A stretch of 64,000 nucleotides of DNA, taken from positions 205,158,001 through 205,222,000 of the forward strand of contig JBITNC010000001.1 of NCBI GenBank assembly GCA_050084985.1, written 5' to 3'. Below, one piece after another: positions 9,242 to 49,527 of the stretch. The notes under the pieces were generated by a model that saw nothing but the letters and a program-made list of their open reading frames with translations, had not been told where the DNA came from and ran no database searches. This stretch comes from Nageia nagi. Taxonomy: Eukaryota > Plantae > Pinophyta. Within the stretch, counting starts at the first letter, position 1. Each line of letters starts with the position of its first letter. The translations under genes were made by a program, and so were the position numbers.

Positions 9242-9403
9242 AGACTCTAGAGCTTAATGAAATACAAGACTCTAGAGCTAATAGAACACAAGACTATGGA
9301 GCTTAATGAAACCAAAGACTTTGTAGCTAAATGAAATAGAAGACTCTAGAGCTAAGTGAAACACAAGACTATGGAGCTAAGTGAAACATAAGACTCTGGA
9401 GCT
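9242..9403. repeat. 25-bp tandem repeat, ~6.5 copies (AGACTCTAGAGCTAAGTGAAACACA), in the Gypsy 3' UTR
   Basis: Units start at 9242, 9267, 9291, 9316, 9341, 9366 and 9391. Confidence 0.95.
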
Positions 9404-9567
9404 TTTAAAGAGGATACATATTTCATATAACTTTTGAAATGGATGAATGTAGAGATAAAATAGATGAAAATAAAAATATTGGAGTTTATTACTAATGACC
9501 TAACAACTCAAGGAAAACAAAAATACTTAAAACTTAAGAGTCAACCATGTCCTTTAAGATTTTCATC

Positions 9568-21012: not shown

Positions 21013-21215
21013 TACTTCACTTGAATCTTTTGACAACATCACATGATACATACTTCTCTTGACTCTTTTGATAACATTATCCACTGCATACTGCACTTAA
21101 CTCTTTTGATAATATCACCCACTATATACATCACTTAACTCTTTTGAAAATATCACCCGCTATATACTTCACTTAACTCTTTTTACAATATTACCCATTG
21201 TATACTTCACTTAAC
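21013..21215. repeat. 38-bp tandem repeat x5.3 (TACTTCACTTAACTCTTTTGATAATATCACCCACTATA)
   Basis: Units counted directly. Confidence 0.95.
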
Positions 21216-21230
21216 ACATATCTATGTACA

Positions 21231-21340
21231 ACAAGGCTTAGAAATAACACCCAAAAATAATACAAGGCCCAAAAACAATACTCAAAAATAATAAAAGGCT
21301 TGAAAACAATGTCCAAAAATAATACAAGGCCTAGAAACAA
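21231..21340. repeat. 31-bp tandem repeat x3.5 (ACAAGGCCTAGAAACAACACCCAAAAATAAT)
   Basis: Units counted directly. Confidence 0.9.
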
Positions 21341-21359
21341 ACATGGGTATCCTAAATTT

Positions 21360-21489
21360 TAATAGGGCCTAGACCAACTGCTCCAAAATCCATAATAGGA
21401 CCAAGATTGACTACTCCAAAATCTACGATAGAACCTAGACTGACTACTCCAAAATCCATAATAGGACCTGGACTAATAGCTTCAAAATT
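21360..21489. repeat. 33-bp tandem repeat x4 (TAATAGGACCTAGACTGACTACTCCAAAATCCA)
   Basis: Units counted directly. Confidence 0.9.
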
Positions 21490-25000: not shown

Positions 25001-27401
25001 ATAATTTTCCCATACATTTATAATGATTTGTTAAAAATATATAATTAAATAATATTAAATTATAATGGAAAGAATTCATAGTTTCTATCCTATACATAGT
25101 ATTTTAAAGGCTACAAATATCACATGCAATTTCAACCAAATGCACATGATCTACACAAAGACATGTAATCTATACAAACATAGTTGGTTGTAGGCTGAAT
25201 GTAGGTAACATTAGAAATACACATGATCATCTAGAATTGCACATCATTCTCTCTCAAGGTAAGATCACTTATTTTTGTTAATACAAAAAGCATAACTAGG
25301 AATATAAATTGCAAATGCAAAATAATTTTTTACACTATTTTTTATTCTTATATACTTGGTTGAATTAAATTATTCTTAGATTACACTAAATATACTTAAT
25401 ATGTATTTAGGAAATAAAACATAAGATAAGGGGTGGGAATGATCATACATGTGCATGTTTGTTAACTTAAAATGAATATTGCTATCTTGATTCATATATG
25501 GGAATGTTTCAGTTTGGCTTAAAATGAATGTTAAAAGGAATCTCATTTTTTTGTTTTAATAAGATAGCTTTTCATATGCATTTAGTTAGGGTAAAAAAAT
25601 GAACAATGGTGGTGATTTGGAGGTCATGAAAACCCATTAATATCCTTAATATATTTCTTAGCTCAAGCATTAATCCATATTTCATCATTGGTAGGTTGGT
25701 TACCTTAGCAACTTAACACCAGGTAACCAAGTTTTATGATGCCCACTTGTCTGTGTTATTCATCCTAGTTATAACTTTCAATGCTAAATAGCATTGGGAT
25801 TTTCCTAGGTTAGCACTTATGTATTTTGATCTGGAACTTTATGCAACTATAGAAAATCCCTAAGTATAGGGGCTTTCATTAGTTCACCTATGTCAACTTT
25901 TTTAAGAAACATTTACCCTACCCCTTTAAACACTTGACTAGTGTGTACTTTAGGAAAAATAAAAGAGGTCATAAAATGAATTCATATCATACAGGTCAAA
26001 TAAATATAAATCAATTAGTGAAAATTTAATCTAGATATTAATAATTGATATATTTAAATAAAATGGTAGGCATAGAGGTTGCATTTTCATAATTATTTTA
26101 TCATAGTCTCACACAAAACATAATATAATCAAATGGTTTCTAGGATTTAGAGTTATTTACTTTAATTCTTTTTGTGTAATTAGTTTTATTAAATCTGACC
26201 ATATATTAAAGGAATAGTGATGGGGAAATGACTCCCTCTTTTCCCCCTTTAAACATTACCAAATCTAATCTACAGGTTAATATGGTGCAAATGAAAAGTC
26301 AAAAGGCTAGATAATCTAACCAAGGGAGTCCACAAAATGTGCATTCTCATCACTAATGTGATGAAGAATATAATGAAATTCTAGAATACCAATAGCATCA
26401 TGAAAATCCCCTCAAGATAAGGAGGAATAACTTGGATTAGAAACATTATATGATTCTCACCAAGATGACCATAGCATAGATGAAGTTTATTCTCATTTAG
26501 CTAGTATTCAAGGCCTCCTAGTTCTATCCTTAATATTTTGACTAGATACGTAGACTCAATCAAGTCTTCTCTATAATGGGATACTTTTCACAATTCCCTA
26601 GATACATATATTTTACAACGTAGAAGTAACTATGCTTTAACCTAACCCCTATGTGATGAGGATCCTCAGTCATAATCTATCATTGCAATTCTTCATATAC
26701 TTGAACATAAATAGAAATGTGAATGTGTACCTATTATGATTAATGATGAAAACCAAGGGTTTAATATAGAAGAAGGGTTGATTATCCACCCTCCATCATA
26801 CATGTTCTAGATATTCATATTGTACAAATCACGAACATGTGTATTTGCACATTATGAGTATTAATGATATTTCTCAGGAATGATAATTACCATATGATGA
26901 TCCATACTTTATGATCAAGTAAGTCACCCTAGATAATAACCTTTTTTATCCTAAGTTATAATAAAAATATCTCTTCCCATCATAAGCAATACAATAGTCA
27001 TTATCTAATAGGATTATTTGAGTATTCCCTCCATATATGGGACATTATGGGAAGACATCATGAGTGTCTTCCCATAATTCTTATCATCATTAGTAAATAC
27101 CCTTGCATAGAGTTAGAGAGTCTCTTCTTTTAGATAGGGGAGTCTCAGTGCATTCCCCTCGTATACCTAGAGAGGTCCCACCATGAAGACCTAAGCATCT
27201 ACCTAGGATTCCTTCACCCATATATAGAGTTTCTCATCATATCTTGATTGTTCATCATCATTAAGAGTGATCTCAATGTCTTATTAAAAAAAATGACTCA
27301 ATCACTTTCTTAGTCATTCTTCATCTAGAGAATAATATTTCCAATAAAGGTATCATCATGAGTTTCCTTAGAAAAGGGTTTCATGCCATTATTCACCTAT
27401 G

Positions 27402-27634
27402 TTTCAACATGTTACTTTGTAGGGATTATGGGATAATATCCTAGAACATGATTATAACTCCTATTAAGCTATTTTCAATTGAATTTTAGTGGATTTACGT
27501 AACATTCCTTAGCATTCATTTTTGTTCCTTCATGTAGCCTCCTTGAGCTCAATTTTAGTTCCTCATTAAGGTTCTACATATTATACTACAAATTTACTTA
27601 ATGAATCACATTGTTGTATTCTCAAATTATTTCA
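27402..27634 (+). mobile_element. 5' LTR (5'-truncated) of the split Copia element
   Basis: Colinear with the 3' half of LTR 49098-49527 (AATATCCTAGAACATGATTATAACTCCTATT...CTCAAATTATTTCA). Confidence 0.85.
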
Positions 27635-27767: not shown

Positions 27768-28846
27768 ATGGATTCTAGAGTTAATTCTCTTCTCATACCA
27801 GAATTCAATTTAGAGGATTATGAATATTGGGCATTGAAAATGAAGCATTTGCTCATAGGTAAAGGAGTGTGGGACATTATTAATGATGACTATGTGGAGC
27901 TATATTGGGACACACTTCCTCAAGCTGATAGGCCTACTAAAAGAGTGGCCAAAAATAAAATATGTTTTGTAATCTATCATCTCTAATTAGCCTTGGACAA
28001 GAGAATGTTCCTAAGGATTGCTAGTTGCAATATGACCAAGGATGAATGGAAGGTATTAAAACATGGATTTAAAGGAAATGATCAAGTGAAGAAAGTGAAG
28101 CTTCATACTTTAAAAATAGAGTTTGATAATCTAAAGCAAAAATAGGAAGAGAAAGTTGGTGAGTATTTTGTAAGAGTGAAGACATGTTTCCAAATGATGG
28201 AGATACTTGGAGAGGAGGTAAAAAATCTAATTGTAGTGAAGAAAGTGTTAAGAACACTTATTACAAAATGGAGCCAAAAAACTATTATGTTTAAAGAGAA
28301 TAAAAATACGACAACTCTTAATATTGATCAACTTATTGGTTCCTTGATGTCTCATGAGGAAAGGCTTGCTCCACTTTCAAATGTTGGGAGTGTGGAAGAG
28401 AAGGATTCAATTCTAAAGAAGGTGACACTACTTCTAATGGTAAATGGAGAGCTTAAGGTAGAGAAAGAGGTAGATATTATAGAGGAAGAGGAAGACGAAG
28501 AGGAAGATGAAGAGGTAGGAGAGGTGGCTTCCCAGGTAGAGGAGGATTCCAAGGAAGAGGAAGGGAGGATTCTTCAATAGGTGAAAAGTGAGACAAATAA
28601 TTTTAATATTGTAATAAATATAGACACTATGAAAGGTAATGTAGATTGAAGGCTTCCAAAGAAGGAGACCAAAGTGCAAACTATGGTGACAAGTATGGAT
28701 CCTCCACCTTGTTCTTATGTTATGCCCATTAAGCCCAAAAGCTGGATAAGGCATGGATCCTTAACATGAGTTTCTTCAACCACATGAATAATAAGGGAGA
28801 TTTATTTTATACCATAGATGACTCATATAAGTCCAAGATCACACTT
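27768..28846 (+). pseudogene. Copia gag and start of protease (5' part of the split element)
   Basis: MDSRVNSLLIPEFNLEDYEYWALKMKHLLIGKGVWDII, a UBN2-like region (VKKVLRTL...LIGSLMSHEERL), an RGRG-rich tract, zinc knuckle CNKYRHYER*C, then NHM...DDSYKSKITL. Confidence 0.9.
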
Positions 28847-29252
28847 ATGAAATATTTTAAAGGGAAAATTGGAAAATCAAGGCTATAATTATAGATTTTC
28901 ACTTTTTGATTTGGCTAGTATAGTGCATGGTGGGTCCTGCCTTAGAGAAATTTTTTTATAAAAAAAATTATATTCTTGACCCATGTAGCTAACCTTTTAA
29001 CATGATTTCAAATATATTAGCCCTTTTTTCTAAACTTAATTTAGCTCATTCACCTTGAAATTATAAAAATAATAAATAATTCTACCTAAATAGTCACTTA
29101 TAGGTTAACAAATATATACATATCAAACTTCCCTATCCATATGATACCATGCCACCATATAGTGATATTGGAATCATATTTCTAAAATTGGATCAAAACC
29201 TATATCTGGTATAAATCTAAATTTGGGTTGGAACTTACATTGGGAAGTTGTA

Positions 29253-29730
29253 ACTAGGTTGGAAGCATTTCCTCTATAATCAAGTTATAAGCATTTCCTT
29301 TGCATCCAAGTTAGAAGCATTTCCCTTACAATTGGGTTAGAAACATTTTCTCTATAGTCTGGTTGGAAGCATTTCCTCTACAGCTAGGTTGAAAGCATTT
29401 GTTTTGTATCTATGTCAAAAGCATTTCCTCTATAGCTAGTTTAGAAGCATTTCCTTTACACTTGGCTCAAAAGCATTTCCTCTATAGCTAGGTTAGAAGA
29501 ATTTCCTCTACATTCATGTTAAAAGCATTTAGTATACATCCAAGTTGAAAGCATTTCATTTGCAATTGGGCCAGAAACATTTCCTCTACATCTAGGTAGG
29601 AAGCATTTTCTCTATAGCTGGGTAAGAAGCAATTCCTCAAGCTAGGTTAGAAGCATTTCCTTTATAGTTGGGTCAAAAGCATTTCCCTTGCATTCAGGTC
29701 AAAAGCATTTCCTTTACACCTAGGTTAGAA
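29253..29730. repeat. 26-bp tandem array, ~18 copies (CTAGGTTAGAAGCATTTCCTCTACAG)
   Basis: AAGCATTTCC recurs every 26 bp. Confidence 0.95.
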
Positions 29731-29904
29731 CATGCATCTATTCATAACCTACCTCCATTTGAAAAGCATTTTCTTGTAACTTGCATCCTGATAGGAAGAA
29801 ATTTCTATATCTGATTCAAATGAAATCTCACCCACTCATAAGAGTGATGCAAAACTTAGTGGTAATAGAGGTGTAATAGGATGCACTTATACAAAACCTA
29901 AAAG

Positions 29905-32900
29905 CATTTTGTTATATTTTAAACATTGAAGATAAATTGGGAGGCAAAATCAACTTGTCCACTAGTATGCAATATCTAAGAAATTTCTTAGACACCAATG
30001 AACTAATAGAACTTAATCTAAAAGAAAATTGATATACATGGTCCAAGAGGAGAATAGGGAGAGGTTTTATCTTGAGAATACTAGACTAGATGATGGCTTC
30101 CTAGGAATGGTTGGACCAGTACCAAAACTATGCCTTATCCTTTCTACTAAGGATTTCTTCTGATCATAGACCAATACTTCTTACAATGGAGAATATGCAA
30201 AATATAAAAGCTCCTTTCAAATTTTAAAACATGTGGATGTCACATAAAGACTTCAAGGATATGCTCTTTGGGTGGTGGAAAATTAAAATTCAAGGTATTG
30301 CTATGTACAAACTTACAAAGAAGCTTGATGAAGTGAGAAAAAATTTAAAAATTTGAAACAAGAAAGAGTTGAAGAATGTTCACTACATAAAAGCTTAGCT
30401 GAAAGAGAGAATGAAAGAGATCAAACATGAAATTCTTAGAATAGGTCACACAATAGATTTGGAAAAGAGGAAAGGTAGCTATTGGTGGCATTCTATAATA
30501 CCCTTACCCAAGAGGAACAAATGTGGAGACAAAAACCAAGAATTACATGGATTAAAGAAGAAGATTGAAACACTAAATTCTTCAAAGTTACCATAATGAG
30601 AAGAAAAAATTTCAATAAGATTGTTCAAATAAAAAAATAGGATGGTAGTGTCATAATTAAGGAGAAAGAGATAAAAAATGAAGCTGTCTAATTCTATGAA
30701 AAGCCTCTATTAATAAACTAGAAGGATAGTACACAAGCTATAAACAAAATCATTCAAAATATACTTAGTATCATAACTCATAAGAAAAATGAAGCACTAA
30801 AAAAGAAAATCACAAAAGAGAAGTGAAGAAACTTTCTTCCTAATGGAACCAAATAAATCCCTAGGACCTAATGGGTTTCTTGTAGGATTCTTTTAGAAGA
30901 ATTGGGAGATTTTAGAAAAGGAAATTTGATATGCTATTAAAGAATTCTTCACAAAGGGTAAATTGTTAAAATAGTGGAACAAGATGGATTTATTGGATTT
31001 ATTTTAGATAGACAAATAACAAATGGTATTATTCATATCCATGAAGTCCCACACTCAAACTATAATAAAAAATACCTACTATCATTTTCAAACTTGATAT
31101 GAAGAAGGCTTATGATAGGTTCAGTTAGAAATTTTTTAATAGAATGCTACAAGCCTTTGGATTTGGGAATATTTGGAGGAAGTGGATAACTGAATGTATT
31201 GTAACATAAATGTTCTTAGTTCTAGTTAATGGAGAAGTCATAAGCTATTTTAAATCATCAAGAGGTATAAGGAAAGGAGATTTGATATCACCTTATCTCT
31301 TCATTATTTTGGTAGAAGAATTGGGTAGAATGATTAAACATGCTAAGAAGGAACATATAATCAAAGGGGCAGTACTAGGCCCAAATTGTAGTCCAACCAC
31401 ACACCATCAATTTGTGGATGATACTATATTTATTAGAAAGGCTAAGAAAGGGGAGGTGATAAGGTTCAAAAGTATTCTTGAAATGTACAAAAAAGCTTCA
31501 CATCAAAGAACAAACCTCCAAAAAATAAAGATTTACTTCCTTAATTATTTTTATAGAGTTAAAAAAAATATAAGCAGAATATGGGGGTGTCTTGAAGGAT
31601 AATTCCTAACCAATTACTTAGGAATGATTTGTTTGTTGGGAGACTAAAAGCTTAATACTAGAATAGTCACATTTAGAAAAATTCAAAATAAACTCATAGT
31701 ATGGGAGGAAAAAACTCTTACCTATGCAGGGAGGCTTACCCTTATAAAAATAGTTCTCCAAAGTGTTCCCATATATTTCGCTATGATGTTCAAATTCCTA
31801 ATTACTATTTGTAACAAAATTGATTAAATTTGTTATATATTCCTTTGTACCAAATAGGAAAATAAAAGAAGCTTATCCTTGGTAATGTGGAAGACCATCT
31901 ATAGTGAAAAATATTTGGGAGGACTAGGTCTAGGGAAAATGAAGCAAGTTAGTCAAGGCTTGAGAGGTAAGCTTATTTAGCAAATTTCTTATGGTAATAA
32001 AAGTGAATGGGTCTAAATTATCATAGAAAAGTATATGATGGGATAATATGTCATTCTAAGAATCCAAAATCCCCCTTATGGCTCTACAATATGGAATGGT
32101 CTTACCTTAGCTAGATCAGAGATCATGAATCATATCATGTGGGATGCAAGAGATGGAAGTAATGTTTATATGTGGGAAGATACTTGGTTCAAGGTTAAGC
32201 CCCTAAACCAAATATCATAGTTTTAAAAAGGAGGTAGATGTACCCAAGATAATCAAGGACAAACTATTGATAATTATTATGATAATTCTCTAAACAAATG
32301 GTTTTTTCTCAAGCCTAAAGATGAAAAATGTAGAAGATAGCTACAAACCCTTGAACAAGAAATGAATACAACCAAAATTATCATGAATAATAACATAGGA
32401 AATTTTAAATGGGGTAAAAAAAGAAGGCAACTATATGGTTAAGAAAGCTATTAAGATCATGAATGAAGATGATTTGCAAGAACCAGGAAACCAAATTTGG
32501 AGGCCTAAAATTATACCAAAAATAGCCTTCTTCCTTTTTATAGTAGTTAGAAATAGATTGATGACTATTAATAATATGAAGAAAAGAGGGATCATAATGG
32601 TTAATAGATGTATCTTATGCCATCATAAGGAAGAAGATGTTAATCATCTTTTCATACACTATGAATATACTCAGAAGTTTTGGAGAAGAATGTGAAGGGA
32701 AGGGAATATAGCTGACCTTAAACCCCAAACCATAAGTAGTTTCATCCAATTCATGAGCTCCAATTCTAAGGATAAGGAAAATGAAAAACACATGTGTTAC
32801 TCTTATTGCCCATGTTTGGTGGTAAATATGGAAGCAACATAATACAAGGATCTTTGAGGGCAAATATAATAAAGTGGCATAGGTTTATAAAAGTAGTATT

Positions 32901-35350
32901 TATAAGGCTGATGAAAATATAATGCATGTTGGAGAACCTAAAATATGGTACCCTTTTTTAAAAAACTCTTTAAAATTAATGAAGTCTAACTTAGGAAATA
33001 GTTTTGTCTTGGGAAAGTGTAGGTAACTTCATAGCCAGACAAAGGAAGATTTGTTTATTATGAAGGCTAAAATTTTAAGGTACGATTGCAAGGTTGGTAT
33101 GAGTGACTATGAAATGATAGAGATAAGTTAGAAACATGTGGGAAGGTAATTCAATTTATTCACATGAGTTAGATATCATTTTGATGAGAAAATATGGCAT
33201 GATGGGGGAAGGCAACTTAATTCATCAAATGAATTAAATGCCACTATGATAGGAAAAGCATCCAAAACTTTATAGCCAATCCAAAATAAAGAAGAATCAA
33301 CATAAAGAAAACAAATAGGTACAAGATCCATAGAAAAATTGTAATGGGGGCTGCTCTAGTTTTTATTAAGCCCAACAATCCATAAAAGGCAAAAAAGGAC
33401 CTTAACATATGGCACCTGGTTTGCAAGGGGGACTTGAATACATTCATAGAAAATTGCAACGGGCCTAATAGGAGATTGGAAAACATGATAGTTCATAGTT
33501 GGAATAATGGGAAATGCATAATCCATGGCAAAGAGATCCACTTTATAGCTAATACCATAGCTCAGGCTACTAGTCTCCCAAATTAGGGGAAATAAATCAA
33601 ACACAACTCCAAGATGATTAAAGGGGAGGATATCAAGAAATTTGAAATAAGGGGTATCCATTTGCTACCTTATCAAACAATATACTATAGTAGCAGCCTA
33701 TCATAATCATGGTATAAACTATGTAAGGTAATCATGAAGTATATCACACCCGATGGTAGGCATACAAAGGTTTATATTCATCACATAATTCTCCTCTTTT
33801 GATTCAACTAGGAAAGAGTTAATTTGGAGGATTTTATGAAATTTTCCATGTTTATCTCAATGGGGAAGTGCAAAGCTAACCCCAATTTGATACCACTCCA
33901 TCAAATAGTAATGCTACTTATCTACAAACATGCCTTGTCCATGTAAGTCCCATAATAAACCCTTCACCACCAGATGGAAGCATTGGAAGAAGAAGGAAAT
34001 GATACTCAAATTGGCCATGAAGAGGAGGAAAAAAATGAATGCCCATTGTAGTTTCATCAATGAAGAAGGAATGAGGATGAGGATAACTAAATGCAAAATT
34101 CTTTTCAAGAAGAAATAACATACAATCAAGAGTATTGTTATACAAATATAATTCACACCAATAGCTCAGAGGCTAACACCATGAATCCTTGCACCTATCA
34201 AATTGAAGCCCTGAAACCCATAAGAAAGTGGACTCATGCAAAATATCATGCAAACTAGCCCAAAGGTAAGATTGACTCTTCTTTGAATAACCCTATTAAT
34301 ATATAAGATAGTCCTACTAAGTTAGAAGATCACTTCATTGGAAAAGTTTACACTAGAACCTAATCTAGAAAGAAGAATTTAAATAGGCCTAAGGTCAATG
34401 ACTCCTCATCTATATCCTAGGAGGTATCTAATTCTACCACTTATTTTGACTAAGAACCTCAACATCAACCACCCCCTCCATTTTATCCCCAACATGCCAT
34501 CCTTCTCTTTCTACCCATTCTCACCATCCCCTAATACCCAAGATTACCCTCTTCTTTTTCTTCCCTAATTCCATAGACATTATAGGAAATTCAAGATTCC
34601 TACTATTATATTTTCCTAGAACATCCACAATCACATGTTAGCCAAGGTAAATCACTATAAATGTATCCATATCACCTTGTTCAAATCCCTCCTAGTGTTT
34701 CAGCATATGCAAGGAGCATAAGATCAAAATAAGGAAATCATGTTTACTAGAGAAATGTGGAAGCTCATATATTGTAAATTCTACAAACATGGTTATAAGA
34801 AGTTGCAAAGGATAGTTTAAGTGGAACCTAATATGGAGGAGAGAAGATTAGCAACCTACTAGGAGTTCATATTCACTTCTATTCATGGAATTATAGCATA
34901 GTTTAATGAAGGAATTTACTTCGCACCAAAGCCCCTCAAGGCATGCAAACTAGGCGACAAGGAAAATCTCCATTGATAATGGTAAACACAAATCCTATTT
35001 TTTGGAAATGTTGTTTTGAAGACATGTTGCTCAATAGTGTAGAGACATATGGTTTTTCTTGCTATAAAAGGATACTAATCTTCAATATTCAAATGCAGTG
35101 CTTCATTTTGTTATGTACTTACATAGTTTTTGTTATAAGGTTTTTCTGTTATGTAAAGGATAAGTATTATTTAAATTCCTAGTCTATAGTTTATTTCCAT
35201 ATATGATCCCTTGTATATGATGGAGGAAAGTTATCCTATTAGGTTTTGCTTTTCTAACCTTAACTTTGTAAAAAGTTTCAAGAAACCTTTCAAAATTCTA
35301 CCTCTTTTTGATTAATATCAAATATAATCATCGATTTTAATAAAAAAAAA
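29905..35350 (+). mobile_element. 5'-truncated L1-clade LINE with a long 3' region and poly(A)
   Basis: EN tail (YTWSKRR..RILD..SDHRPI), RT (SLGPNGF, KLDMKKAYDR, RGIRKGDLISPYLF, HHQFVDDT) and zf-RVT (RCILCHHKEEDVNHLF). A-tail at 35342-35350. Degenerate TSD-like AAAACCTAAAA/ACAACCAAAAA. Confidence 0.9.
33344..34980 (+). pseudogene. Extra ORF in the L1 3' region, homologous to ORF 15440-17036
   Basis: MGAALVFIKP...IWHLVCKGDLNTFIENCNG...SWNNGKCIIHGKEIHF..TIAQATSLPN*G...WYKLCKVIMKYITPDGR...VNL...PLHQIVMLLIY, followed by acidic and Pro-rich tracts. Confidence 0.75.
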
Positions 35351-38282
35351 CAACCAAAAAAAGTGCAACAACCAACTCTTATCATAGAAGGTACACTCAA
35401 TTTAAATTTGTATTTTAAGTTGATTGTAAATTGTACTTTTTAATTAAGATAGTTTAAAATGCATTAAAAGTAGGAATATTTTGTTACAAAAAATACATCA
35501 GATGTCACTCCCCTTGAAGAAGACATATCCAATGATTAAATATTAGATGAATTTCAATTCGATATTACTCTCAGTGAACATGAACCTAAAAACAAGAGTG
35601 ATGATAATAAGAAAGGATTTCAAGAACACACAAGTAGTAAAAAGTCATCCAATAGAAAGAGAAAAAGAAAATGGAATGTAGGTAGAACATTTCAAGATGA
35701 ATGAGTTGGAACATATCCTTTAATAGAATTTGTAATGCCTAAAAATAGTTTGGAAGAACCTATGGAATGCAGATGTGTATGTTGCAATTGGAAAACAAAA
35801 AAAGAACATAGAATTCAACTAAAAAATGATAAAATTTAGAAACATTATGGGAAAAATACGAGTATGAAGAAGTAGATGGTAAGTGAATAAGGGTTATTAA
35901 GTAGAAAGATAAATTAAAATGCTTACATCTAAAATATCAAGAGATGTATGAAAATAAGATGAATAGAAGGAAGAAGATTTTTGAAAAAGGTGAAATAATA
36001 AATCAATATATGGATAAAGTAAATTAGGGAAATTTAATTGCTAATACTGTACAATTTTTTGTTGTATTTCAAATTTTAAAAAATGGTAGGCCTATTTTAG
36101 ATATTTCATTATATAAAGAATTTATCCATTTTGTTGGTATAAATTTATTTAAATTAACACAATACCATTTTTTTGAGAGTAATGAATGGGATATTTCAAA
36201 TTGTATTACGACGATTGAGATTCAAGATTTACGAGCAAAGGTAAGAGATGAAAAAAATATTTCATTATCCATATATGAAGTTGCTACTATTGATCATACT
36301 TCTTAGGTTTGATTACATGTCTACATCTTTCAAGAATCTAAATACATGAGAAAACCTCCCTTTCTATCAATCTAAAAAATATCTCAAAGTTCTAATGCTA
36401 AAAATTCATGCAATCTTGTTGTTAGTTGTCTAAAAAACATAGTAGGAATGGAAAATTATAAAATAGCTATGAAGTTGATATGTGTTTGGGCTGATAGCCC
36501 ATCTGTAATGTAGGAAAATAAAAATGGACTTTGTGTTAAGCTTTAAACAACATATTCTCCGTACATGATAGCAATTCATTGTATGGTACATAAAATGAAT
36601 CTTTCATACAAAATAGTTAACAAATTTGAAATTATTGCTAAGGTGGAGGAATTGGTTCATGATATTCATTCTTATTTTGTACATAGTTTAAAGAGGATTA
36701 TACAATTTCAATAATTTGTTGAGGGTATAATAGATGGTAAAAAAATGCTTAACAATATTGATATTAGATGTATTTCTTTGTATCTTCCCTTACTAAGAGT
36801 ATGCAAAGAATATATCTCATTATGTGGGTATGTGTGTGGAAATTGAATAAAATTTGATAAAGCAAAATATATATTATACATGTTAATATATAGTTAAATG
36901 TTACACACTTTATGTGGAATTCTACCAATGTTGAAGGAAATTCATAATGTAATGAAAATAGCTCAAACAAGATACATCTATATTGTTGATTTTGTAAGGG
37001 CAAGAAAACATACTTTTCTTGTTTTAGAAAACTTGTATATTTGCAAGGATAACTTTATGGGTGATAGTTTTGAGGCATGGCAATCTATCATTAATTTGAA
37101 ATATCCAAAAAGTTTCTTGAAATTTGATATTATGGGTAAGCTTGGTATAATTGTTCATGATAAATTGACCCCAATGCATTGTTATTATAGGAGAGATGAT
37201 ATTTATGTTTAAGGTTTAGAAGAAATGTCTATAACATCACAACTATTTGATCATCTTATTTTTTATGTAAGAAAAAAATTGCAAAAATTATTAGAAACAA
37301 TGTCAAGTGAAATAAGAGATCAATTTAGAAAGAATGATTTGGTTGAGTCAATAAGTATTGTGCACCCATATTTTTGGTCAACAAATAGTAGTTGCATGAG
37401 TTCAATATATAAAAAATATGTCAGTAATCTTATGAAACACTTTTTTTGATAGTTAAAATCAACAATGTTAAAATTCTAAGTATTTTGGACAAAAATAGTT
37501 GACAGATCAATCAAACCAATTCAATGTTACTATGTATGAACAATACAAGGAGTTGAGTGAACCAAATGAAAATGGCTTAATAGTATAATTATGGGGTAGA
37601 CTATATCTAAGTACAATAATGTAGATACAAATAAGTTAATATTTTTTCCTATATGAATTATGCTAGACTATGATTTTGGGATCTATTATAGATGAATGGT
37701 TTTTTAGTACTTTGGCTTATATCAAATCAAAAGCTCACAATAGATTGAATAAGAACTTGAAAATATGTTTAAGAATTTATACATCTAAATATGCTTTGGA
37801 AAATTTTCCATATGATAGAGTTATTTCTACATGATATTCAATTGCAAACAAGAGATGAACATCAAGGGCTAAATGTGCTAAAGATGCTAAAAATAGGGTA
37901 GTGGAAGTAATTCATAAAGATGAGTTTTACCAACAAATTATTGAAAAGGGATTAATTAATGTGCAAGAGAGAGATGAAGAGGAAGATGAAGAAAGTGTAG
38001 ATGTGTAATTTTCTTTTAGTTTTTTCAATCAAATCCATTGTTGGTATAATAATTTGCAATTTCATACTTTTTGAAAGGTTTAATGAAATTATTTGATATT
38101 TTTGAATCTCATATTTTCTATATGTAATGTGTTATTGAACTATTATTTGAATATACAAATGATTTTTTTTACTTTAATTTTCAAACTGTATAATATGATT
38201 AACATGTAGTAAACTATTAATGATATTTTTATTTTAATTTTTTTTTATAAGTTAGCATTTGTAAACTATATGTGATATGATT

Positions 38283-38582
38283 AGCATGTAGTTGCAATCA
38301 GACCAATTTTATAGATGGGCTAGATGCATGTTATTATAGCTAGGTGTTGCATCTGGCTTGACTATGATAACATGCATCCATCTAAGTTTCAATGACATGT
38401 AGTCAAAATGATTGCATGTTGTTGTAGTTAGATTAGATTCATGTTGTTATAGCTAGGTCAAATGCAACACTCAGATGTAATTACTTGCACCTAAATTGAC
38501 TACAACAACATGCATTAGAACCAACTGCATGTCATTGCATCTGGGTCAAGTGCAAGTAATTATAGCCAGACCAGGTGCATCT
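38283..38582. repeat. Degenerate ~26-bp array in mixed orientation, between the convergent genes
   Basis: TGCATGTTGTTGTAGTTAGATTAGA-type units and reverse units (GACTACAACAACATGCA). Core example TGCATCTGGGTCAAGTGCA. Confidence 0.8.
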
Positions 38583-38932
38583 CTTTTTTTTTTAAGTAGA
38601 AAACATAAATCATCATATGTCATACAATAAGTCAAAAAAATTATGAATTTAAAATAAATTTTATTAGGTACTAAAGAAAACTAATGCTAAAGAAAACTAT
38701 TACAAATTTACAATCAAGTAAACATGTTTTTAGTATTCTAATTAGATTGAACAACCATAAGTTTTAAAGGATAATAACACTAAAACCATTTACCAATTAC
38801 CATAATCCATGATTTACACACATGTCACATAATTCAAAATCATATAGGAAGTTATATACAAGTATTTTATATAAAATGGTAAGCCTCTCTCATTACTAGT
38901 TTGCCAAAATGATAATATTTAACTAAAACTAA

Positions 38933-41900
38933 AAATATCTCCCACTTCAAGCTAGTGGTTGTTGAGCTAAGGTTGATGCTTCTACATACTTTTGAGGTTC
39001 TTCTCTCTTAAATACATTTTTCTTTTTGTATATTGATAGCAAGTAAATCCATTTTTGAAAGAATATTATGCTCTTCCTTCATTGGATCAACATTATTGGA
39101 TTGCATAGATGAAGTACTCTCATCTTTCTTCTTCCATAGAATCTTGTAATCCATGTTGTGTTCTTGGATGATCAATTTTAAAAGTCAATTTTCCTATTGA
39201 ATTTGAGCAACATTTTTCTTTTGCTTTATCAATTCAAGCAAGAAGGCTTTTGCATTTTTGAAATAATGCTACATCACTTTCATTGTGTTCTTCAAGTTTT
39301 CATATCTTGCCTACATTCAAAATTAAAACTATTGGTATAACTTAAAAACATTATGAAAAATACCATGAAAATATAATTTTAATTCTAATTGTTAAAACTT
39401 ACATCAGCTCTCTACTTTTCTAAGTTTGATGTATTCAACAATTTCTGGTCATATGTCCATTTATCAAAATAAACTTGGGCTTCAACATTGATGTTTTCTA
39501 GCCTATCCAAAGCCATGTTTAGAATGTCATCAATTGTTCTCTTTTGAAACTTAAAACTTCCTTCCTTTGCATATTTCATCATAGAATTGATGAAAACTGG
39601 GTTATGTGCAATGATCTCATACAACTTGTCTATATGATTATGATTGTGATACCAAACATTTATCTCTTGGGTAAATATTTTTGCCCATTTCTCCCAAATA
39701 CTTAATTTTTCCAAATCTAGAATGAGAAATTAATTAAAATTTTTCAAGGTAGCCTCTCCCACATCAATTGAATTTTTGAAATCTAAAGCTTCATAGCTTA
39801 ATTCTTTGGTTGTCTTTTCCTAAGATGTCAAGGGTGTTTCTTATATTTTGGCTATCGTAGTGGTTTCAAGCTCTTTGGACACATGTTGCTCCCATCCAAT
39901 TACATCTTGCACCTCAAATATTAGTATACTAGTAAGAACAAGTTTGCCAAGATATTATGAAAATATATTATCTAATCTTGAATTTTCCAAGCAATCAATC
40001 TCTATATTGAGCAAACTATCATTTGGCACCTCAAGGCCAAAATTCATATGGGGAAAAGTAACATGGCTTTAAACTTTAAAAATCTTTTGATGACTTGTTC
40101 CTTATGCTTACATTGGTTGAGAGATACTTCCTCTCATTATTTATTGTTATGATGGTGGTGGTAGTGATAATAAAGATTTACCCCATCATAGAGGTATTTT
40201 CTAATAGGTTACTACATAAAGAATTGCAAATTTAAATCCACCAAATATTTAAAAAAATGAAAAATAAAAATAACTTAATTAATAAAAAATTTATACTAGG
40301 TGCTTGAGATGATGGTGTACTTGGAAAATCCTAATTATTCATTCCGTGAATGAATACCAATAGGGGTATATCATGAATCGTTATTTCAACAACCAAATTT
40401 GCATCAAAGAATTTTAATTATTTACTAAAATAATTCTAGTTCAACCACATATAATTTTAATATTTACCTTCCTTATCCTACATAGGTGTTAGATCCCTAT
40501 ACTATGGTTATTGTTGTTCCTTTACATTATTATTGTTATGTCAGCTAGTGTCCTTTCATTGTAGTGGCACCCCTTCAACTCCTATATATACTAAGGAGGT
40601 ATTATCATTTGGATTGTCTATTGTTATGTATTTGATGTAATGTAAAGGAGGTTGCCACCTCAAAGTGGCTTATTATTACTGATTTTATCTCTTATTCAAG
40701 GCATTGAGCTCTTTCTCTTGTGATTTTATGCTATTTTGGGAACTTGGTTCATAACATTTGGTATCAGAGTAGATGATTCTACTGTTTCATTGCTCAGAAC
40801 TAGTCATCATGGAATTTTTGCTACCAATTTATTTTTGCAAGGTTTTAGATTCTGAAATTTATTGGGTTTTTAGAAGACATGCCAAAGACATTTTAGTTCA
40901 AATTAAAGCTCCTAATTCACTATGTTTTTCAAGTTACACTTGGGGGAAGTTAGGGTTTGTGACTAGTCTCAAAAGCAGGTCAAAAATAGGTGTTCTAGCT
41001 AAAAAGTGTATATCTGAAGTATTACAGCTCCAAACTTTGTGAAACCTATTGTATTGGTTATCATATGGATTGAAGTTTATATGGTACAATTTTCAAGGTC
41101 TAGGAATAACAGGTGACTCATGGCACTTCGTACAAAGTTTGGTCTTCTAAAAAATCCAAAACTTAGCACATTTTGGGAAAGTTACAGCCAATTTCTCTTG
41201 GAATATCATAATTTGATGTAACCTATGGCATTGAAAATAAGACATCTAAGGCTACTACATGTAGAAATTTTAGAATCTAAAGGGATAAAATTTTATATTT
41301 ACATCAGTTGGAATTTTGGATAATAGAATAGTCTCCAAATCACGGTTTAAAAAGTAATACTCAGTCAAAATGCCATCGAAAAAAATTGCTACACCAACTA
41401 GACCTCCAGAGGGTTCATCCATGACTATAGAAAAAAGTGAAGACATATCCTTCTAAATATCCCAATTGGAAGAATTGGTAAAAGGGTGTGTAAAAAAGGG
41501 TGATTTGGAGGAATTAAAAGGGGATTTGACAAAAAGGATGGTAAGATCAATTGAAGAGTTGGCAAATAATATGGATCAAAATATGGAAAAGATTGTTCAA
41601 TTCATACAAAAACCAGAGGGAAAGATTCCTAAAGATGTTGATATGGCCCAAGGTTATTAGGAAAATAATGATATTATTTAAGGAGATAAACCCTTCATTA
41701 ATAAGCCTAATTCAGGAAGATATGCTTCTACTAATGGAAGTAATCAAGCATGGTTCTCAAGGGGAATGCAACTCCCCAAGATCAACATGAGGAAGTTTGA
41801 TGTAAAGGACCCCATGACTTGGATATTTCAAATGGAGCATTTTTTTGATCTACACCAAGTACCAACATCACAAAAAGTAACTATTACATCCTTATATCTA

Positions 41901-44275
41901 GAGCCTGAGTAGGTTGTATGGTACTAATGGCTTTGTGAATGTAAAAAGGGTTCTATTATATCTTGGTCCATTTTTATAGAGGAACTGACAGCCTACCATG
42001 AGGATGTTAAGAATAATTCCTTATTTACTCAATTGACAAATCTAAGGCAAAAAGGTTCAATGATGGAGCACATTCAACAATTTCAAAAGTTAAGTCTTAG
42101 AGTGAATGACATACAAGGTGATAGATTGTTGGATCTCCTTATGGGAACCTTAAAGGATAACATTCAACATGAGTTGCATCTATTTGAACCAACATCCTTA
42201 GATATGGCTTTTAGGATGGTAAGGAAGGTTGAAAGTAAAAATATGGCAATGGCTACTAAATGGTTTCCCTTGAACACTTATAAAGAAAATAATGTTCCTT
42301 CTTCTCACTTACCTAAACTAAGAAAATAATGTTCCTTCTTCTCACTTACCTAAACCTACAAAATTGACACCTCAACAAATGGATGAAAGATGAGCAAAGG
42401 GTCTATGCTTCAATTGTGATAGCAAGTATAGTAAAGGACATAAATGTGTGGAGAAGAAAATTATTCTACATAGAATGTGAAGAGGAAGAATAAGAAGAAG
42501 AAAAATCATCCACATTCAAAGAATTAGAAGAGATTACTACTGAAGAAAAGACTCCCACCATATCTTGTAATGCATTGGCTAGAATCACTACTCCTCAAAC
42601 TACACTTCTAGAACTCAACGAGGAAGGGAAAATTATATTGGAGCCAGAAGTAATCACTGAATCAAGAATCCATAAGTTAAGAAATCGATCAGTGTCAGAG
42701 TATCTCATTAAGTGGAAGAACCTACCTATTGAAGATTCCACATGGGAAGACGAGAATTTTCTACAGAAGCATCTAGAACTACTCAAACATTGAGGACAAC
42801 ATTTTTTTGAAGTAGAGGGGCATGTTAGATCCCTATACTATGGTTATTATTATTCCTTTACATTATTATTATTATGTCAGCTAGTGTCCTTTCATTATAG
42901 TGGCACCCCTTGGAATCCTATATATACTAAGGAGGTATTATTATTTGGATTATCTATTTTTGTGTATTTGATGTAATGTAAAGGAGGTTTCCCCCTCGAA
43001 GTGGTTTATTATTACTGATTTTATCTCTTATTCAAGGCATTGAGCTCTTTCTCTTGTGATTTTATGCTATTTTAGGAACTTGGTTCATAACAATAGGTTT
43101 CAATTTTGGCTGTTGAGGAGGAAGGGAAGATTCCTTGTTAGCTTCCTCTTCATCTATCTTAAAATCAATGACATGCATATGTCTTCTAGTCCTATGATGC
43201 ATTTGAGATTCAGTTCGAGAACTAGGAGCTTGAGATGCTATGTCAAATTCTCTTTAAACTTCATGTAGCCATTTTCCTCTCATAGTATCCTCCCTTCTAT
43301 CCTTCATAGCATCAACTTTTTTCTAAAATAAAATACATTTAATTAATACTATGAAAATAGATAAAACATTAAGGTTTATAAATTTTGTATTAAAATTGGA
43401 TGCAATGAACCTATAGTTAGATAAGAGATAGACCTATCTTCACAATCATTTGATGGTGTGATGTAGGTGTTGGTGTTTACTTCAAATAAAACAATGCCTC
43501 ATAGTATAGGCAAAGAATGAAATTATTTGTATTTACCTCACCCACACCTTTTGTTTTTACTCTATTCAACTCATTCTTTATCTTATATGAAATATAGGAT
43601 GACTAGTCAAATCGAGTCCCATTAAAGGAACATATAAGATAAGATACTCCCCAAAAAGGCATATCACCTATTTTTCTCTAAAGAACCAATATGAAAATAA
43701 AAAAATCCATGCAATCCCTAAAAAATTCATTCTTGATAGAAGACATCAGAAGATCCCTTTTCTTCTTGTGGGAAGTCACTACAAATTAAAAAACAAAATT
43801 GTGAATATTTAGAATGAATTAGTTGGATGAAAATTAAACTATAAAAACAAAATTGTATTCTAAAACAAAATTATACTTGTAAGAAAATATATATTCACAT
43901 TATAATTCTCATTAAGGTAGCATTTATCTTTATTGTTGATGAGTATACTAGAATGCACGAGCTCTGCTCCTTGAAATGGTAATCTGGTTAAACAAGCTAT
44001 GTATTCAGCGTTGAAGGAGAAAGTAAAATTTTCTTCTTTTATTCTATAGTCACTAAATTAGTGTTTGTATCATAGTTCTTAATAATATTATTCAATAGTG
44101 CATTCTTTGTAAGAATTTCAAGCATATAGATCAAACAATGTAAAGATGGGTTGTGTATCCATTCCTTTTCTAAATCATCCATTTATTCTAATAGAGGAAT
44201 TAAATCATTGGTTAGGTGATACTTGAAGTAAATACCCTTTCTCCTACCTCTAGATCCATTGTAGCTACTCACCAT
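38933..44275 (-). pseudogene. Spliced accessory gene of the DNA transposon: PMD/DUF1985-like N-terminus, coiled-coil C-terminus
   Basis: ATG at 44275 with a TATA at ~44390. Translation MVSSYNGSRGRRKG...LLNNIIKNYDTNTNLVTI..FSFNAEYIACLTRLPFQG | ...GTRFD*SSYISYKIKNEL. GT-AG introns of 85-98 bp at 43779-43876, ~43323-43410, 40212-40296 and 39311-39402. Includes ORF 39412..39714. Interrupted by the Gypsy at 40487-43092. Confidence 0.7.
40487..43092 (+). mobile_element. Complete non-autonomous chromovirus (Reina-like) LTR element: gag plus chromodomain only
   Basis: 270-bp LTRs at 40487-40756 and 42823-43092 (TG..CA, ~16 mismatches by eye). TSD ATAGG on both sides. PBS TGGTATCAGAG at 40759. PPT GAAGTAGAGGGG. 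gag LPKINMRKFD..., KGLCFNCDSKYSKGHKC. Chromodomain EYLIKWKNLPIEDSTWE. Confidence 0.95.
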
Positions 44276-44481
44276 TGCCTAATTATTCAATCTTATATTC
44301 CTATTAAGTTCCTAACCCTATTTCTACAGTTCCTTTCCTCCCTATAGAATGCTCTCTATTCAAATGAGCTGAATTAAACAATAGCTAGGGTATATATAGA
44401 GAGAAAATTAATTACACTATGGATTCAAATATATTTCATCAATGTATTAGCATATTGGAGGAAGTATTTAGTGCTTGGTGT

Positions 44482-44920
44482 AGTTGGTATAGATGCATTC
44501 TGAATGCTACCAGTTTGGATGCATTCAAAATGCAACCAGTCTAATTGCATTCAACATGTAGCCAATCTGAATGTATTTTGAATGTAATCAACCTAGATGC
44601 ATTCAAAATGCACTAAGTCTAGATGCATTTAGAATGCAACCAATGCAAATGCATTTTGAATGCATATAAATTGACTACATTATGAATACATCTGGACTGG
44701 TTGCATTCTAAATACATCTAAATTAGCTACATTTTGAATGCATCTACACTATCTACATTTAGAATGCATCTAGATTAGTTGCATGATGAATGCCACTAGA
44801 CTGGTTGTATTTTTAATGCATCCAAATTGTCTACATTGAGAATGCATCTAGATTGGATACATTATGAATGCATTTAAACCAACTACATTATGAATGCTTC
44901 CAGATCGACTACATTTTGAT
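44482..44920. repeat. 26-bp tandem array, ~16 copies, second half inverted
   Basis: Units TAGATGCATTCAGAATGCAACCAGTC run to ~44655, then the reverse complement GACTGGTTGCATTTTGAATGCATCTA. Confidence 0.9.
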
Positions 44921-45089
44921 TATAGTTTATACATTTGAACATGTGTTATGTTTTTTCCATGTATGAAATATCATCTCATCTATAATATTATGACATTTTT
45001 ATCAGTTTGAATAATAATTCCTAGCTAAAACCCTTCTATAAAAAATTGAATTATCTTTCATTTTAACATAATTTCTTATTTATTTTTAG

Positions 45090-45650
45090 GTAGTGCTTAG
45101 TGAAGAATGATCCCTATGAAGAGTATTTGCATCTTTTCAACCCATTCAAGGATAGAGTTTCAAATAATGATAAAGATTATTTTAAAACACTATCTAGAAT
45201 AGGAAGAAATTATCCATAGATAAAATATATTAGAGGTTTATTACAATTTCAATTAGATATGGTCATTAACAAGTTGGCAATAATTTTATGGCTTTATTTT
45301 AAGTCAATCATTTTTCATCATTTTAAGTTTTACATATATAATTATTTTTACTTAATTAATTTGAAGGAAAGTATGGGCAACTTTTATTTTAAAACTCTAT
45401 TCTTGAACATTTTCCAATGCTAGTTCATTCTTCACTTCCATGCAGGTGTGGAGCATATCTTCCCCTATGCCCTATGATTATAATAACCTAGAGGAGACAT
45501 CTCCCATGGTGGAAACAACTACAATGAAAAGTCATTATAGTTGCAGAGGATCCCAATCCTATTCTAGCTAAAGGTTGAATATCATATTCTATGGGTGAAG
45601 GAGATATTGTGGTTTCCAATCATATTTGTAATATTCAATCCTACTAAGCT
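45090..45650 (+). pseudogene. Possible third spliced gene of the DNA transposon, function unknown
   Basis: Acceptor TTTTTAG at ~45089, then CLVKNDPYEEYLHLFNPFKDRVSNNDKDYFKTLSRIGRNYP*IKYIRGLLQFQLDM. An AT-rich intron-like stretch at ~45262-45366 follows, then a further weakly open frame. Confidence 0.35.
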
Positions 45651-45777
45651 TAATTTTTGATCAAGTTGTTAGATTTCCACTTCTCCCTTGCACCTATATC
45701 TCAGGAAGTTTGAGCACTACCAGGAGACATCATCCATGGTGTAAAGACTACTTTGCACTCAAATTTTATTCATTAAA

Positions 45778-45802
45778 TGTGTGTGTGTGTGTGTGTGTGT
45801 GT
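45778..45802. repeat. (TG)n microsatellite
   Basis: Direct reading. Confidence 0.95.
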
Positions 45803-46046
45803 ATAATTTTTTTTTATACTAAATGGTTTATGCTTTCAAAAATTTACTATCAACTATGATTTTTAAAACTAAAACATTTTTGTCAACTTTTTACATCTAT
45901 TTTCCAAAACTGTTCAAAAGTCACCTATTAATTTACATTATTTTTGAAAACCCACCTTCAATTTGAAACATGTTTTGTCTATGTTTTCCTAGAATTTATA
46001 TTTCCATTTTAGATGAAGGTTCTTAAAATTTTCTTTGATCACACTT

Positions 46047-49097: not shown

Positions 49098-49527
49098 TGT
49101 TGGAGATTTAAATTTTTTATTCTTTCTAGAATGAAATATCAATGTATTTCATTATCTATGGAAATGGTATCACACTACTGTAACACTGCACATTTTTTGG
49201 AAACAAAATCACATTTTTAATCATCTTGCATATTTTGTCAGAGTTTTTTGGTAATTATGCTATTTTCTTTAGTTTTTTCTTAGTTGCACTTTGATTCAGC
49301 ATCTATTACTTCATAGGGATGATGGGAGAATATCCTAGAACATGATTATAACTCCTATTTAGTTATTTATAATTGGATTTTAGTGGATTTATGTAATAGT
49401 CTTTAGTATTTATTTTTGGTCCTTCATGTAACCAACATGAGCTTAGTTTTAATTACTCATTGAGGATTTGTATATTGTACTACAAATTTAGTTAATGAAC
49501 AAATTATTGTGTGCTCAAATTATTTCA
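49098..49527 (+). mobile_element. Copia 3' LTR (430 bp) preceded by PPT AAGGGGGAG
   Basis: TGTTGG...TTTCA. Matches 27402-27634. Confidence 0.9.

What the first reader, a model, noticed from the sequence alone, without database searches (positions are those of the whole stretch)
29253..44920. Three different-looking arrays share a 26-bp period and a TGCA-N11-TGCA core with an array-specific 7-bp spacer
Seen in sequence: left array core TACAGCTAGGTTGGAAGCA with spacer TTTCCTC; middle core e.g. TGCATCTGGGTCAAGTGCA with spacer TGTTGTT; right core TGCAACCAGTCTAGATGCA with spacer TTCAGAA. All are 19+7=26 bp. They lie only in non-coding parts of the element: putative transposase intron 1, between the convergent 3' ends, and upstream of the accessory gene. 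Established: Arabidopsis VANDAL elements accumulate tandem repeats in non-coding regions that their VANC protein binds to relieve silencing. Inference: the conserved core and period (about 2.5 helical turns) suggest arrayed binding sites for an element-encoded protein.
Basis: partly seen in the sequence, partly recalled or inferred. Interest (0 to 1): 0.87.

Follow-up and report, generated by a model that had tools for sequence, protein, structure and literature searches.

The report
Related repeat arrays in a dead transposon
Three clusters of a ~26-bp repeat with one shared 19-bp core sit in the non-coding parts of a decayed 17-kb two-gene hAT-like plant transposon; they look like arrayed docking sites for a transposon protein, but nothing here shows binding.

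Summary
The left array (29249-29730) has 18-19 head-to-tail units of 26 bp. The right array (44479-44913) has 17 units of 26 bp, but as two inverted half-arrays that form a long palindrome. The middle cluster (38284-38586) is not a clean array: about 11 degenerate units, period 25 bp with a 6-bp spacer, in mixed orientation.

A scoring matrix built from the 19-bp core of one array finds the other two clusters and almost nothing else in 64 kb. Adding the spacer columns removes those cross-matches. Literal TGCA-N11-TGCA is rare; most units are transition-decayed variants.

All three clusters lie in a 17,190-bp insertion (28847-46036) that splits a copia pol gene and is flanked by a 10-bp duplication. 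The insertion carries a decayed intronless hAT-type transposase gene, a convergent unidentified second gene, and nested LINE and LTR inserts. The arrays lie upstream of each gene and between their 3' ends. "Intron 1" is unsupported.

Contigs of one public run show further copies that include the right array. This scan noted the same three-array family elsewhere in this genome (s1-844033, s1-845830, s1-860235).

Binding-site arrays are the best reading (about 0.45). Within-array conservation is explained by methylation-driven decay, and the second gene's PMD/VANC identity is not supported here.

The parts
28837..28846 (.). Left copy of the 10-bp target-site duplication GATCACACTT.
   Evidence: Read directly. 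The copia reading frame runs ...SKITL|GDDKD... across the insertion. An empty-site loose end appears in run X1 at 46037.
28847..46036 (+). Host element: a 17,190-bp two-gene hAT-like DNA transposon copy. It is decayed and carries nested LINE and LTR inserts.
   Evidence: Searches give the boundaries. Searches support a hAT-type transposase. One search shows other copies and empty sites.
29249..29730 (+). Left array: 18-19 units of 26 bp, all in + orientation, reading T[GA][CT]A-N11-AGCA-TTTCCTC. A degenerate tail runs to about 29910.
31210..32692 (+). Core of a nested LINE (RVT_1 and zf-RVT). It separates the left array from the transposase gene. Its exact ends were not determined.
   Evidence: RVT_1 E = 7.9e-8, zf-RVT E = 7.3e-21.
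35639..37933 (+). Decayed, intronless hAT-type transposase coding region. It has in-frame stops or frameshifts, and an N-terminal basic patch and Cys-rich finger near 35640-35850.
   Evidence: tblastn is colinear with 690-700-aa fern and gymnosperm relatives at 31-51% identity. An AlphaFold2 model of relative P0024 has Hermes transposase as all top 10 PDB hits, E = 5e-6 to 4e-4. No Pfam hit on the pieces.
38284..38586 (.). Middle cluster: about 11 degenerate core units in blocks of + and - orientation, with 25-bp spacing. It lies between the convergent 3' ends.
   Evidence: It holds 5 of the window's 47 CATGCA/TGCATG sites.
38870..44182 (-). Putative second (accessory) gene, decayed and of unknown family. 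It is interrupted by the nested LTR element.
   Evidence: Open pieces seen. Two 60%-identical unnamed fragments, P0039 and P0040. No Pfam hit.
40487..43102 (+). Nested small LTR element with 280-bp LTRs at 93% identity, a gag-like region and a chromodomain.
   Evidence: family D4; Chromo E = 3.4e-10; empty-site joint 40491->43113; very high depth in X1.
44479..44660 (+). Right array, proximal half: 7 units of 26 bp in + orientation, reading TG[CT]A-N11-TGCA-TTCAAAA.
44661..44913 (-). Right array, distal half: 10 units of 26 bp in - orientation. With the proximal half it forms a long imperfect palindrome.
   Evidence: (I1: 173-nt arms, 77% complementary).
46037..46046 (.). Right copy of the 10-bp target-site duplication GATCACACTT.

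Best explanation
The three clusters are diverged copies of one ancestral repeat unit and belong to the standard equipment of this hAT-like two-gene transposon family. Most likely they are multi-site docking platforms for a sequence-specific DNA-binding protein encoded by the element. Two proteins are candidates: the transposase, through its N-terminal basic/Cys-rich finger, as in hAT subterminal repeats; or the unidentified second protein, as in VANC. The platforms sit on the 5' control regions of both genes and on the shared 3' intergenic region. Bound protein would gather many protomers on the element, either to switch on or de-silence its two genes, or to mark its two halves for transposition. 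The second role is suggested because the left array and the distal right half-array are inverted relative to each other and the element has no recognisable terminal inverted repeats.

Shown: homology of the arrays, their positions, their orientation, and their presence in other copies.

Inferred: that any protein binds them, which protein, and what follows from binding. In this copy the system is dead, since the coding regions are broken and the CG/CHG sites are decayed.
For: - Shared 19-bp core with array-specific spacers, cross-validated between arrays and absent from the rest of the window.
- All clusters are non-coding and lie next to the two genes.
- The left array (+) and the distal right half-array (-) are inverted. 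The true ends share no terminal inverted repeat or other motif.
- Contigs of run X1 at 80% identity or more cover the right array at about the same summed depth as its element flanks (16-20 against 17-55). They show unit-number differences (skips of 52, 70 and 84) and opposite-strand joints. So other copies carry the array, and it is not a genome-wide satellite.
- Unchecked scan notes report three related 26-bp arrays in other copies.
- The transposase family has a hAT fold and an N-terminal finger.
- Hermes binds its end through several BED domains (PMC10368747).
- Transposases themselves can act as sequence-specific activators (bioRxiv 10.64898/2026.08.24.746577).
Against: - There is no binding, methylation or expression data.
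- Conservation within arrays follows mutability. Departures from the column majority are 72:24 and 65:27 transitions to transversions, and they fall on the same C/G columns in both arrays. The well-kept AGCATTTCCTC block has no CG or CHG site.
- Fixed left/right differences are not significantly clustered in the spacer (4 of 6 in a 7-column window; 31% of random placements reach that). A Fisher test of core against spacer gives p = 0.19.
- Spacer length is not strictly kept (6 bp in the middle cluster).
- The arrays lie 400 and 1100 bp inside the ends, further in than classical hAT subterminal sites.
- Distant transposase relatives in metagenome contigs lack this unit and any detectable second gene.
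Confidence: 0.45

Rival explanations
1. The clusters are neutral minisatellites related only by descent. A 26-bp minisatellite arose once in non-coding DNA of the family, and pieces of it were copied elsewhere in the element. Each array was then homogenised separately by slippage or unequal exchange, which fixed its own spacer. No protein reads them.
For: - Within-array variation is fully explained by methylation-driven transitions.
- No significant excess of spacer over core divergence.
- The middle cluster is short, irregular and has a different period.
- Higher-order 52-, 78- and 130-bp periodicities are typical of slippage and unequal exchange.
- Related transposase loci carry unrelated short repeats upstream, as non-coding transposon DNA often does.
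Against: - Three separate clusters with the same core are retained at three non-adjacent sites and in other copies.
- They sit exactly at the gene-flanking non-coding regions.
- The outer arrays are inverted relative to each other, in an element with no terminal inverted repeats.
Confidence: 0.3
2. The arrays are read by the host, not by the element. They could act as siRNA/RdDM targets, with the right palindrome producing hairpin RNA. Or they could be arrays of host transcription-factor sites, such as the RY-like TGCATG motifs of the middle cluster, serving as promoter or enhancer.
For: - The right array folds into a stem about 170 bp long, z = -13.5.
- CG/CHG sites in the arrays are decayed, which fits heavy methylation.
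- 5 of the window's 47 CATGCA/TGCATG sites fall in the 303-bp middle cluster.
Against: - The whole window is equally CpG-depleted (o/e 0.07), so decay is not specific to the arrays.
- The full RY motif is present only in the middle cluster.
- No RNA run holds the stretch.
- Being a silencing target does not exclude being a binding platform, as in VANDALs.
Confidence: 0.15

Closest known systems
VANDAL (Mutator-like) elements with VANC anti-silencing protein and its motif arrays, Arabidopsis (PMC5735166, PMC10398659)
   Same: - A multi-gene DNA transposon with almost no terminal inverted repeats and a 9-11-bp-class duplication.
- Short motifs amplified as tandem repeats only in non-coding regions (introns, upstream regions).
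- The repeats expand, contract and differ between related lineages.
   Different: - The transposase here is hAT-type, not MURA-type.
- The second gene shows no detectable PMD/VANC domain.
- The unit is 25-26 bp with a 19-bp core, against a 8-9-bp VANC motif.
- No binding or hypomethylation data exist.
hAT subterminal transposase-binding repeats: Hermes subterminal repeats bound by BED domains (PMC10368747); Ac AAACGG hexamers (my own knowledge)
   Same: - A hAT-fold transposase with an N-terminal finger.
- Many copies of a motif in both halves of the element, in opposite orientation.
- The motif probably once held CG sites, as Ac sites do.
   Different: - Classical sites are 5-6-bp motifs, irregularly spaced, within about 250 bp of the ends and next to clear terminal inverted repeats with an 8-bp duplication.
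- Here there are regular 26-bp arrays 0.4 and 1.1 kb inside the ends, a third central cluster, no terminal inverted repeats and a 10-bp duplication.
En/Spm (CACTA) TnpA 12-bp motif clusters
   Same: - Arrays of one motif in direct and inverted orientation near both ends, overlapping the promoter.
- A two-gene element.
- The binding protein both regulates and de-silences (bioRxiv 10.64898/2026.08.24.746577).
   Different: - No CACTA termini and no 3-bp duplication.
- The transposase is of a different superfamily.
Ordinary minisatellites inside transposons
   Same: Head-to-tail 26-bp units with about 70% unit-to-unit identity and higher-order periodicities.
   Different: Three non-adjacent clusters share one core, and the pattern recurs in other copies.

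Membership tests
VANDAL/VANC-type anti-silencing system | Mutator-like (MURA-type) transposase | tested here: not met
   The coding region at 35639-37933 is colinear with a family whose model matches only Hermes hAT transposase among significant PDB hits.
VANDAL/VANC-type anti-silencing system | Accessory protein with a VANC/PMD-type domain | tested here: inconclusive
   No Pfam match on any open piece at E up to 5. The only relatives are two unnamed 87- and 112-aa fragments. The Atlas lead is weak. The AlphaFold2 model of one exon has pLDDT 62 and was not searched.
VANDAL/VANC-type anti-silencing system | [quoted passage not shown] | tested here: met
VANDAL/VANC-type anti-silencing system | The protein binds the motif and causes local loss of DNA methylation | not testable with these tools
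   Needs EMSA or DAP-seq, and bisulfite data.
hAT superfamily transposon | Transposase with the hAT fold (RNase H-like core with an inserted helical domain and a C-terminal dimerisation region) | tested here: met
   The model of fern relative P0024 (pLDDT 60) has Hermes chains as its top 10 PDB hits, E = 5e-6 to 4e-4, over about 600 aligned columns. A source names a cluster member as holding a HAT C-terminal dimerisation domain. TM-scores are low (0.2-0.3) and Pfam finds nothing.
hAT superfamily transposon | 8-bp target-site duplication | tested here: not met
   A 10-bp direct repeat, GATCACACTT, flanks the insertion. The empty copia site holds one copy. An 8-bp duplication plus 2 chance bases cannot be excluded from a single copy.
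hAT superfamily transposon | Short terminal inverted repeats | tested here: not met
   The best end-to-end match is 11 of 12 with a gap, in AT-rich sequence. Shared k-mers are at chance level.
En/Spm (CACTA) | CACTA termini and a 3-bp duplication | tested here: not met
   The ends read ATGAAAT... and ...TTTCTTT, with a 10-bp duplication.
Minisatellite | Head-to-tail units of 10-100 bp | tested here: met
   TRF gives period 26, with 18.3, 5.9 and 10.3 copies. The middle cluster does not qualify.

The most novel reading that the evidence does not exclude
A hAT-superfamily transposon of a GC-poor (probably gymnosperm) genome has independently built a VANDAL-like, sequence-specific self-activation or anti-silencing module. 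A second element-encoded DNA-binding protein, or the transposase finger itself, would read a 19-bp dyad-like core. That core is amplified into three arrays over both promoters and the shared terminator region. The array-specific spacers would let the platform evolve away from host small RNAs while binding is kept.
Probability: 0.15. Interest if true: 0.8.

Novelty: new variant of a known kind. Interest (0 to 1): 0.45.

Why it matters
Sequence-specific anti-silencing by transposon proteins that bind arrayed motifs is established only for Arabidopsis VANDAL (VANC), and recently for Spm TnpA and a Mutator transposase. Suppose a hAT-type family in a distant, heavily methylated genome uses the same design of gene-flanking arrays with one core and fast-changing spacers. 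That would argue the design is a general, convergent answer of DNA transposons to RNA-directed methylation. It would also give a new protein/motif pair to test. If the arrays are neutral, this is only a well-documented case of minisatellite spread inside a transposon.

Tried and rejected
- Pfam on 37 stop-free pieces of the transposase, second gene and neighbours. Only copia, LINE and chromodomain parts matched.
- Pfam and PDB sequence search on the fern relatives gave nothing.
- ESM Atlas on two exons of the second gene gave a weak winged-helix/AAA-adjacent lead for one and nothing for the other.
- AlphaFold2 of the 105-aa exon with 3 sequences gave pLDDT 62, all helical. It was too poor to search.
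- First-reader note s1-860322 says the region 15440-17036 holds the same accessory family. tblastx finds no similarity and Pfam finds nothing.
- A search for terminal inverted repeats or shared subterminal k-mers between the true ends stayed at chance level.
- Test that fixed left/right differences cluster in the spacer: not significant. Fisher test of core against spacer: p = 0.19.
- Correlation of per-column variability between arrays is 0.45 at the aligned register, the best of the same-orientation rotations. One reversed rotation gives 0.51, so this is not decisive.
- Nine metagenome contigs hold intact transposase relatives. None has a 26-bp unit or a second-gene homologue, and their upstream repeats are different.
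- The other arrays in the window (9242-9404; 21013-21488) give no matrix hits, so they are unrelated.
- The scan's findings index gave nothing by sequence.
- The exons of the second gene were searched one by one.
Full report

TRF reports a 26-bp array at 29256-29730 (18.3 copies, with 52-, 78- and 130-bp higher-order periods). It also reports two adjoining 26-bp arrays at 44490-44642 and 44652-44919 whose consensus units are reverse complements of each other. It reports nothing near 38300-38600.

Read in register:
- Left units are T[GA][CT]A-N11-AGCA-TTTCCTC, 18 full units, all on the + strand.
- Right units are TG[CT]A-N11-TGCA-TTCAAAA, 7 units on + (44479-44660) followed by 10 on - (44661-44913).
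- The right array is therefore a long imperfect palindrome (arms 173 nt, 77% complementary). As single-stranded DNA it folds to -108.8 kcal/mol against -45.2 ± 4.7 for shuffles, z = -13.5.

The left and right arrays are related:
Only 11 of 5000 column shuffles reach it.
- A matrix built from the 19 core columns of the right units alone gives, at 10 bits or more, 12 hits in the left array, 9 in the middle cluster and 3 in the other ~63 kb on both strands.
- The reciprocal matrix from the left units gives 8 hits in the right array, 4 in the middle and 4 elsewhere.
- With all 26 columns the cross-array hits drop to 1 and 0.

So the shared core and the array-specific spacer are real and far beyond chance.

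The middle cluster (38284-38586) holds about 11 weak units in alternating + and - blocks. It also has several spacer types.

Literal TGCA-N11-TGCA occurs only 7 times in the window and never in the left array. The left array also continues as a degenerate tail to about 29910.

**2. What carries the arrays?**

The copia gag-pol reading frame stops at 28846 and resumes at 46037, reading ...DDSYKSKITL|GDDKDIQVEG... (Pfam DUF4219, Retrotran_gag_2 and Pol_BBD).
- A 10-bp direct repeat, GATCACACTT, flanks the 17,190-bp insertion at 28847-46036.
- Contigs of the one public run found (X1, coded organism A) include 8 records that read the uninterrupted copia sequence up to 46037. This is the empty site.

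Inside the insertion:
- **Transposase gene.** A decayed but colinear coding region at 35639-37933 (+) matches 690-700-aa proteins of Ceratopteris, Taxus and an unnamed contig at 31-51% identity. Pfam sees nothing in it or in those relatives. An AlphaFold2 model of the fern relative P0024 (mean pLDDT 60) has Hermes hAT transposase chains as its ten best PDB matches, at E = 5e-6 to 4e-4, although TM-scores are low. Its N-terminus has a basic patch and a Cys-rich finger.
- **Second gene.** A putative gene lies on the - strand (first ATG at 44182, open pieces down to 38870). Its only relatives are two unnamed fragments of 87 and 112 aa.
- **Nested LINE**, with RVT_1 and zf-RVT.
- **Nested small LTR element** at 40487-43102, with a chromodomain. 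X1 also shows its empty site as a joint 40491->43113.

No terminal inverted repeat or shared subterminal motif links the two true ends.

Relative to the genes:
- The left array is upstream of the transposase coding region, about 0.8 kb away once the LINE is discounted.
- The middle cluster lies between the two convergent 3' ends.
- The right array lies about 300-730 bp upstream of the second gene's ATG.
- Relatives encode the transposase without introns, so "intron 1" is unsupported. A 5'-UTR intron cannot be excluded.

**3. Are the arrays a family feature?**

In X1, contigs at 80% identity or more cover the element's right part (43158-45915) at summed depths of 17-55.
- Depth over the array is 16, 20 and 3 in the three array bins.
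- There are unit-number differences (skips of 52, 70 and 84 bp) and opposite-strand joints inside the array.

So other copies carry a right array, probably also with inverted halves, and the unit is not a genome-wide satellite. One caveat: these are short contigs, and a quasi-palindromic unit can produce spurious strand joints.

Notes from this scan are unchecked leads, not evidence. They describe other copies in the same genome with three related or "matched" 26-bp arrays (s1-844033 with a follow-up, s1-845830, s1-860235).

Nine metagenome contigs hold intact, more distant transposase relatives. They have no such unit and no detectable second gene. Two have unrelated short tandem repeats upstream.

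**4. Does the sequence show selection on the core?**

Not demonstrably.
- Departures from the column majority are mostly transitions (72:24 left, 65:27 right).
- They fall on the same columns in both arrays (3, 6-9, 11-14), which read Y-Y-R-R. This is the signature of decayed CG/CHG sites.
- The whole window has CpG o/e 0.07 and 30.6% GC. This fits a Welwitschia-like, deamination-eroded genome (PMC8275611). That attribution is my inference, not a test.
- The best-kept block of the left unit, AGCATTTCCTC, simply lacks CG/CHG sites.
- Fixed left/right differences fall at columns 2, 10, 16, 22, 23 and 25. They are not significantly clustered (31% of random placements reach the same clustering). 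A core-against-spacer Fisher test gives p = 0.19.

The case for function therefore rests on architecture, not on measured constraint.

**5. Most likely mechanism.**

I commit, at about 0.45, to arrays of binding sites for an element-encoded protein. They would sit over both 5' control regions and the shared 3' region.

The candidate binders are about equally likely:
- The transposase finger. hAT transposases bind several subterminal sites through BED domains (PMC10368747). Transposases can themselves activate cognate copies (bioRxiv 10.64898/2026.08.24.746577).
- The second protein, on the VANC model (PMC5735166, PMC10398659).

The left array (+) and the distal right half-array (-) are inverted relative to each other, and the element has no terminal inverted repeats. 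This hints at a role in marking the two halves of the element.

Rivals:
- Neutral minisatellites related by descent (0.30).
- Host-read features, either small-RNA or hairpin targets, or RY-like host-factor sites (0.15).

**6. Comparison with known systems.**

The system works like VANDAL/VANC, hAT subterminal sites or Spm TnpA clusters, but it is a member of none.
- The transposase is hAT-type, not Mutator-type.
- A PMD/VANC domain is not detectable.
- The 10-bp duplication and the missing terminal inverted repeats do not fit hAT.
- CACTA termini are absent.

I class it as a new variant of a known kind. It is moderately interesting, and it was already seen by this scan on other copies.

**7. 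Limits.**
- Only one low-share DNA run and no RNA run were available.

Noticed in passing
window 28837-28846 and 46037-46046: The 17.2-kb hAT-like element sits inside a Ty1/copia pol gene and is flanked by a 10-bp duplication (GATCACACTT). It has no recognisable terminal inverted repeats. hAT elements normally make 8-bp duplications. Contigs of run X1 show the empty copia site.
   Followed up: partly
window 40487-43102: A small LTR element (280-bp LTRs, 93% identical) encodes only a gag-like region and a chromodomain. It is nested in the second gene. In run X1 its summed depth is 2000-7000, against 17-55 for the host element, so it is an extremely abundant, probably non-autonomous family. An empty-site joint is also seen.
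   Followed up: partly
window 1-64000: The whole window has CpG observed/expected 0.07 and 30.6% GC. The closest named transposase relatives are from Taxus, Ginkgo and ferns. This fits a deamination-eroded gymnosperm genome such as Welwitschia (PMC8275611). The source organism was not verified.
   Followed up: partly
window 23562-25013 and 51582-53045; also 27412-27605 and 49306-49499: Direct repeats about 28 kb apart, at 75-84% identity. They are probably two copies of another repeat family, or the LTRs or flanks of the copia element that hosts the insertion.
   Followed up: no
window 9242-9404 and 21013-21488: Further tandem arrays: 25/75-bp units at 9242, and 38-, 31- and 33-bp units in a row at 21013-21488. 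They give no match to the 19-bp core matrix, so they are unrelated to this finding.
   Followed up: partly
window 38284-38586: The middle cluster holds 5 of the window's 47 CATGCA/TGCATG (RY/Sph-like) hexamers in 303 bp. This follows from its TG-starting spacer after the TGCA of the core.
   Followed up: no
L004 898-1048; L001 346-644: Metagenome contigs with intact, intronless relatives of the transposase carry their own, different short tandem repeats upstream of the coding region. L004 has GGAATGTCAT-type repeats of 10, 22 and 40 bp about 0.45 kb upstream. L001 has 68- and 119-bp repeats about 2 kb upstream.
   Followed up: partly
window 15440-17100: A first-reader note says this region holds the same accessory-gene family next to a gypsy gag. 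Neither tblastx against the second gene nor Pfam supports that.
   Followed up: yes
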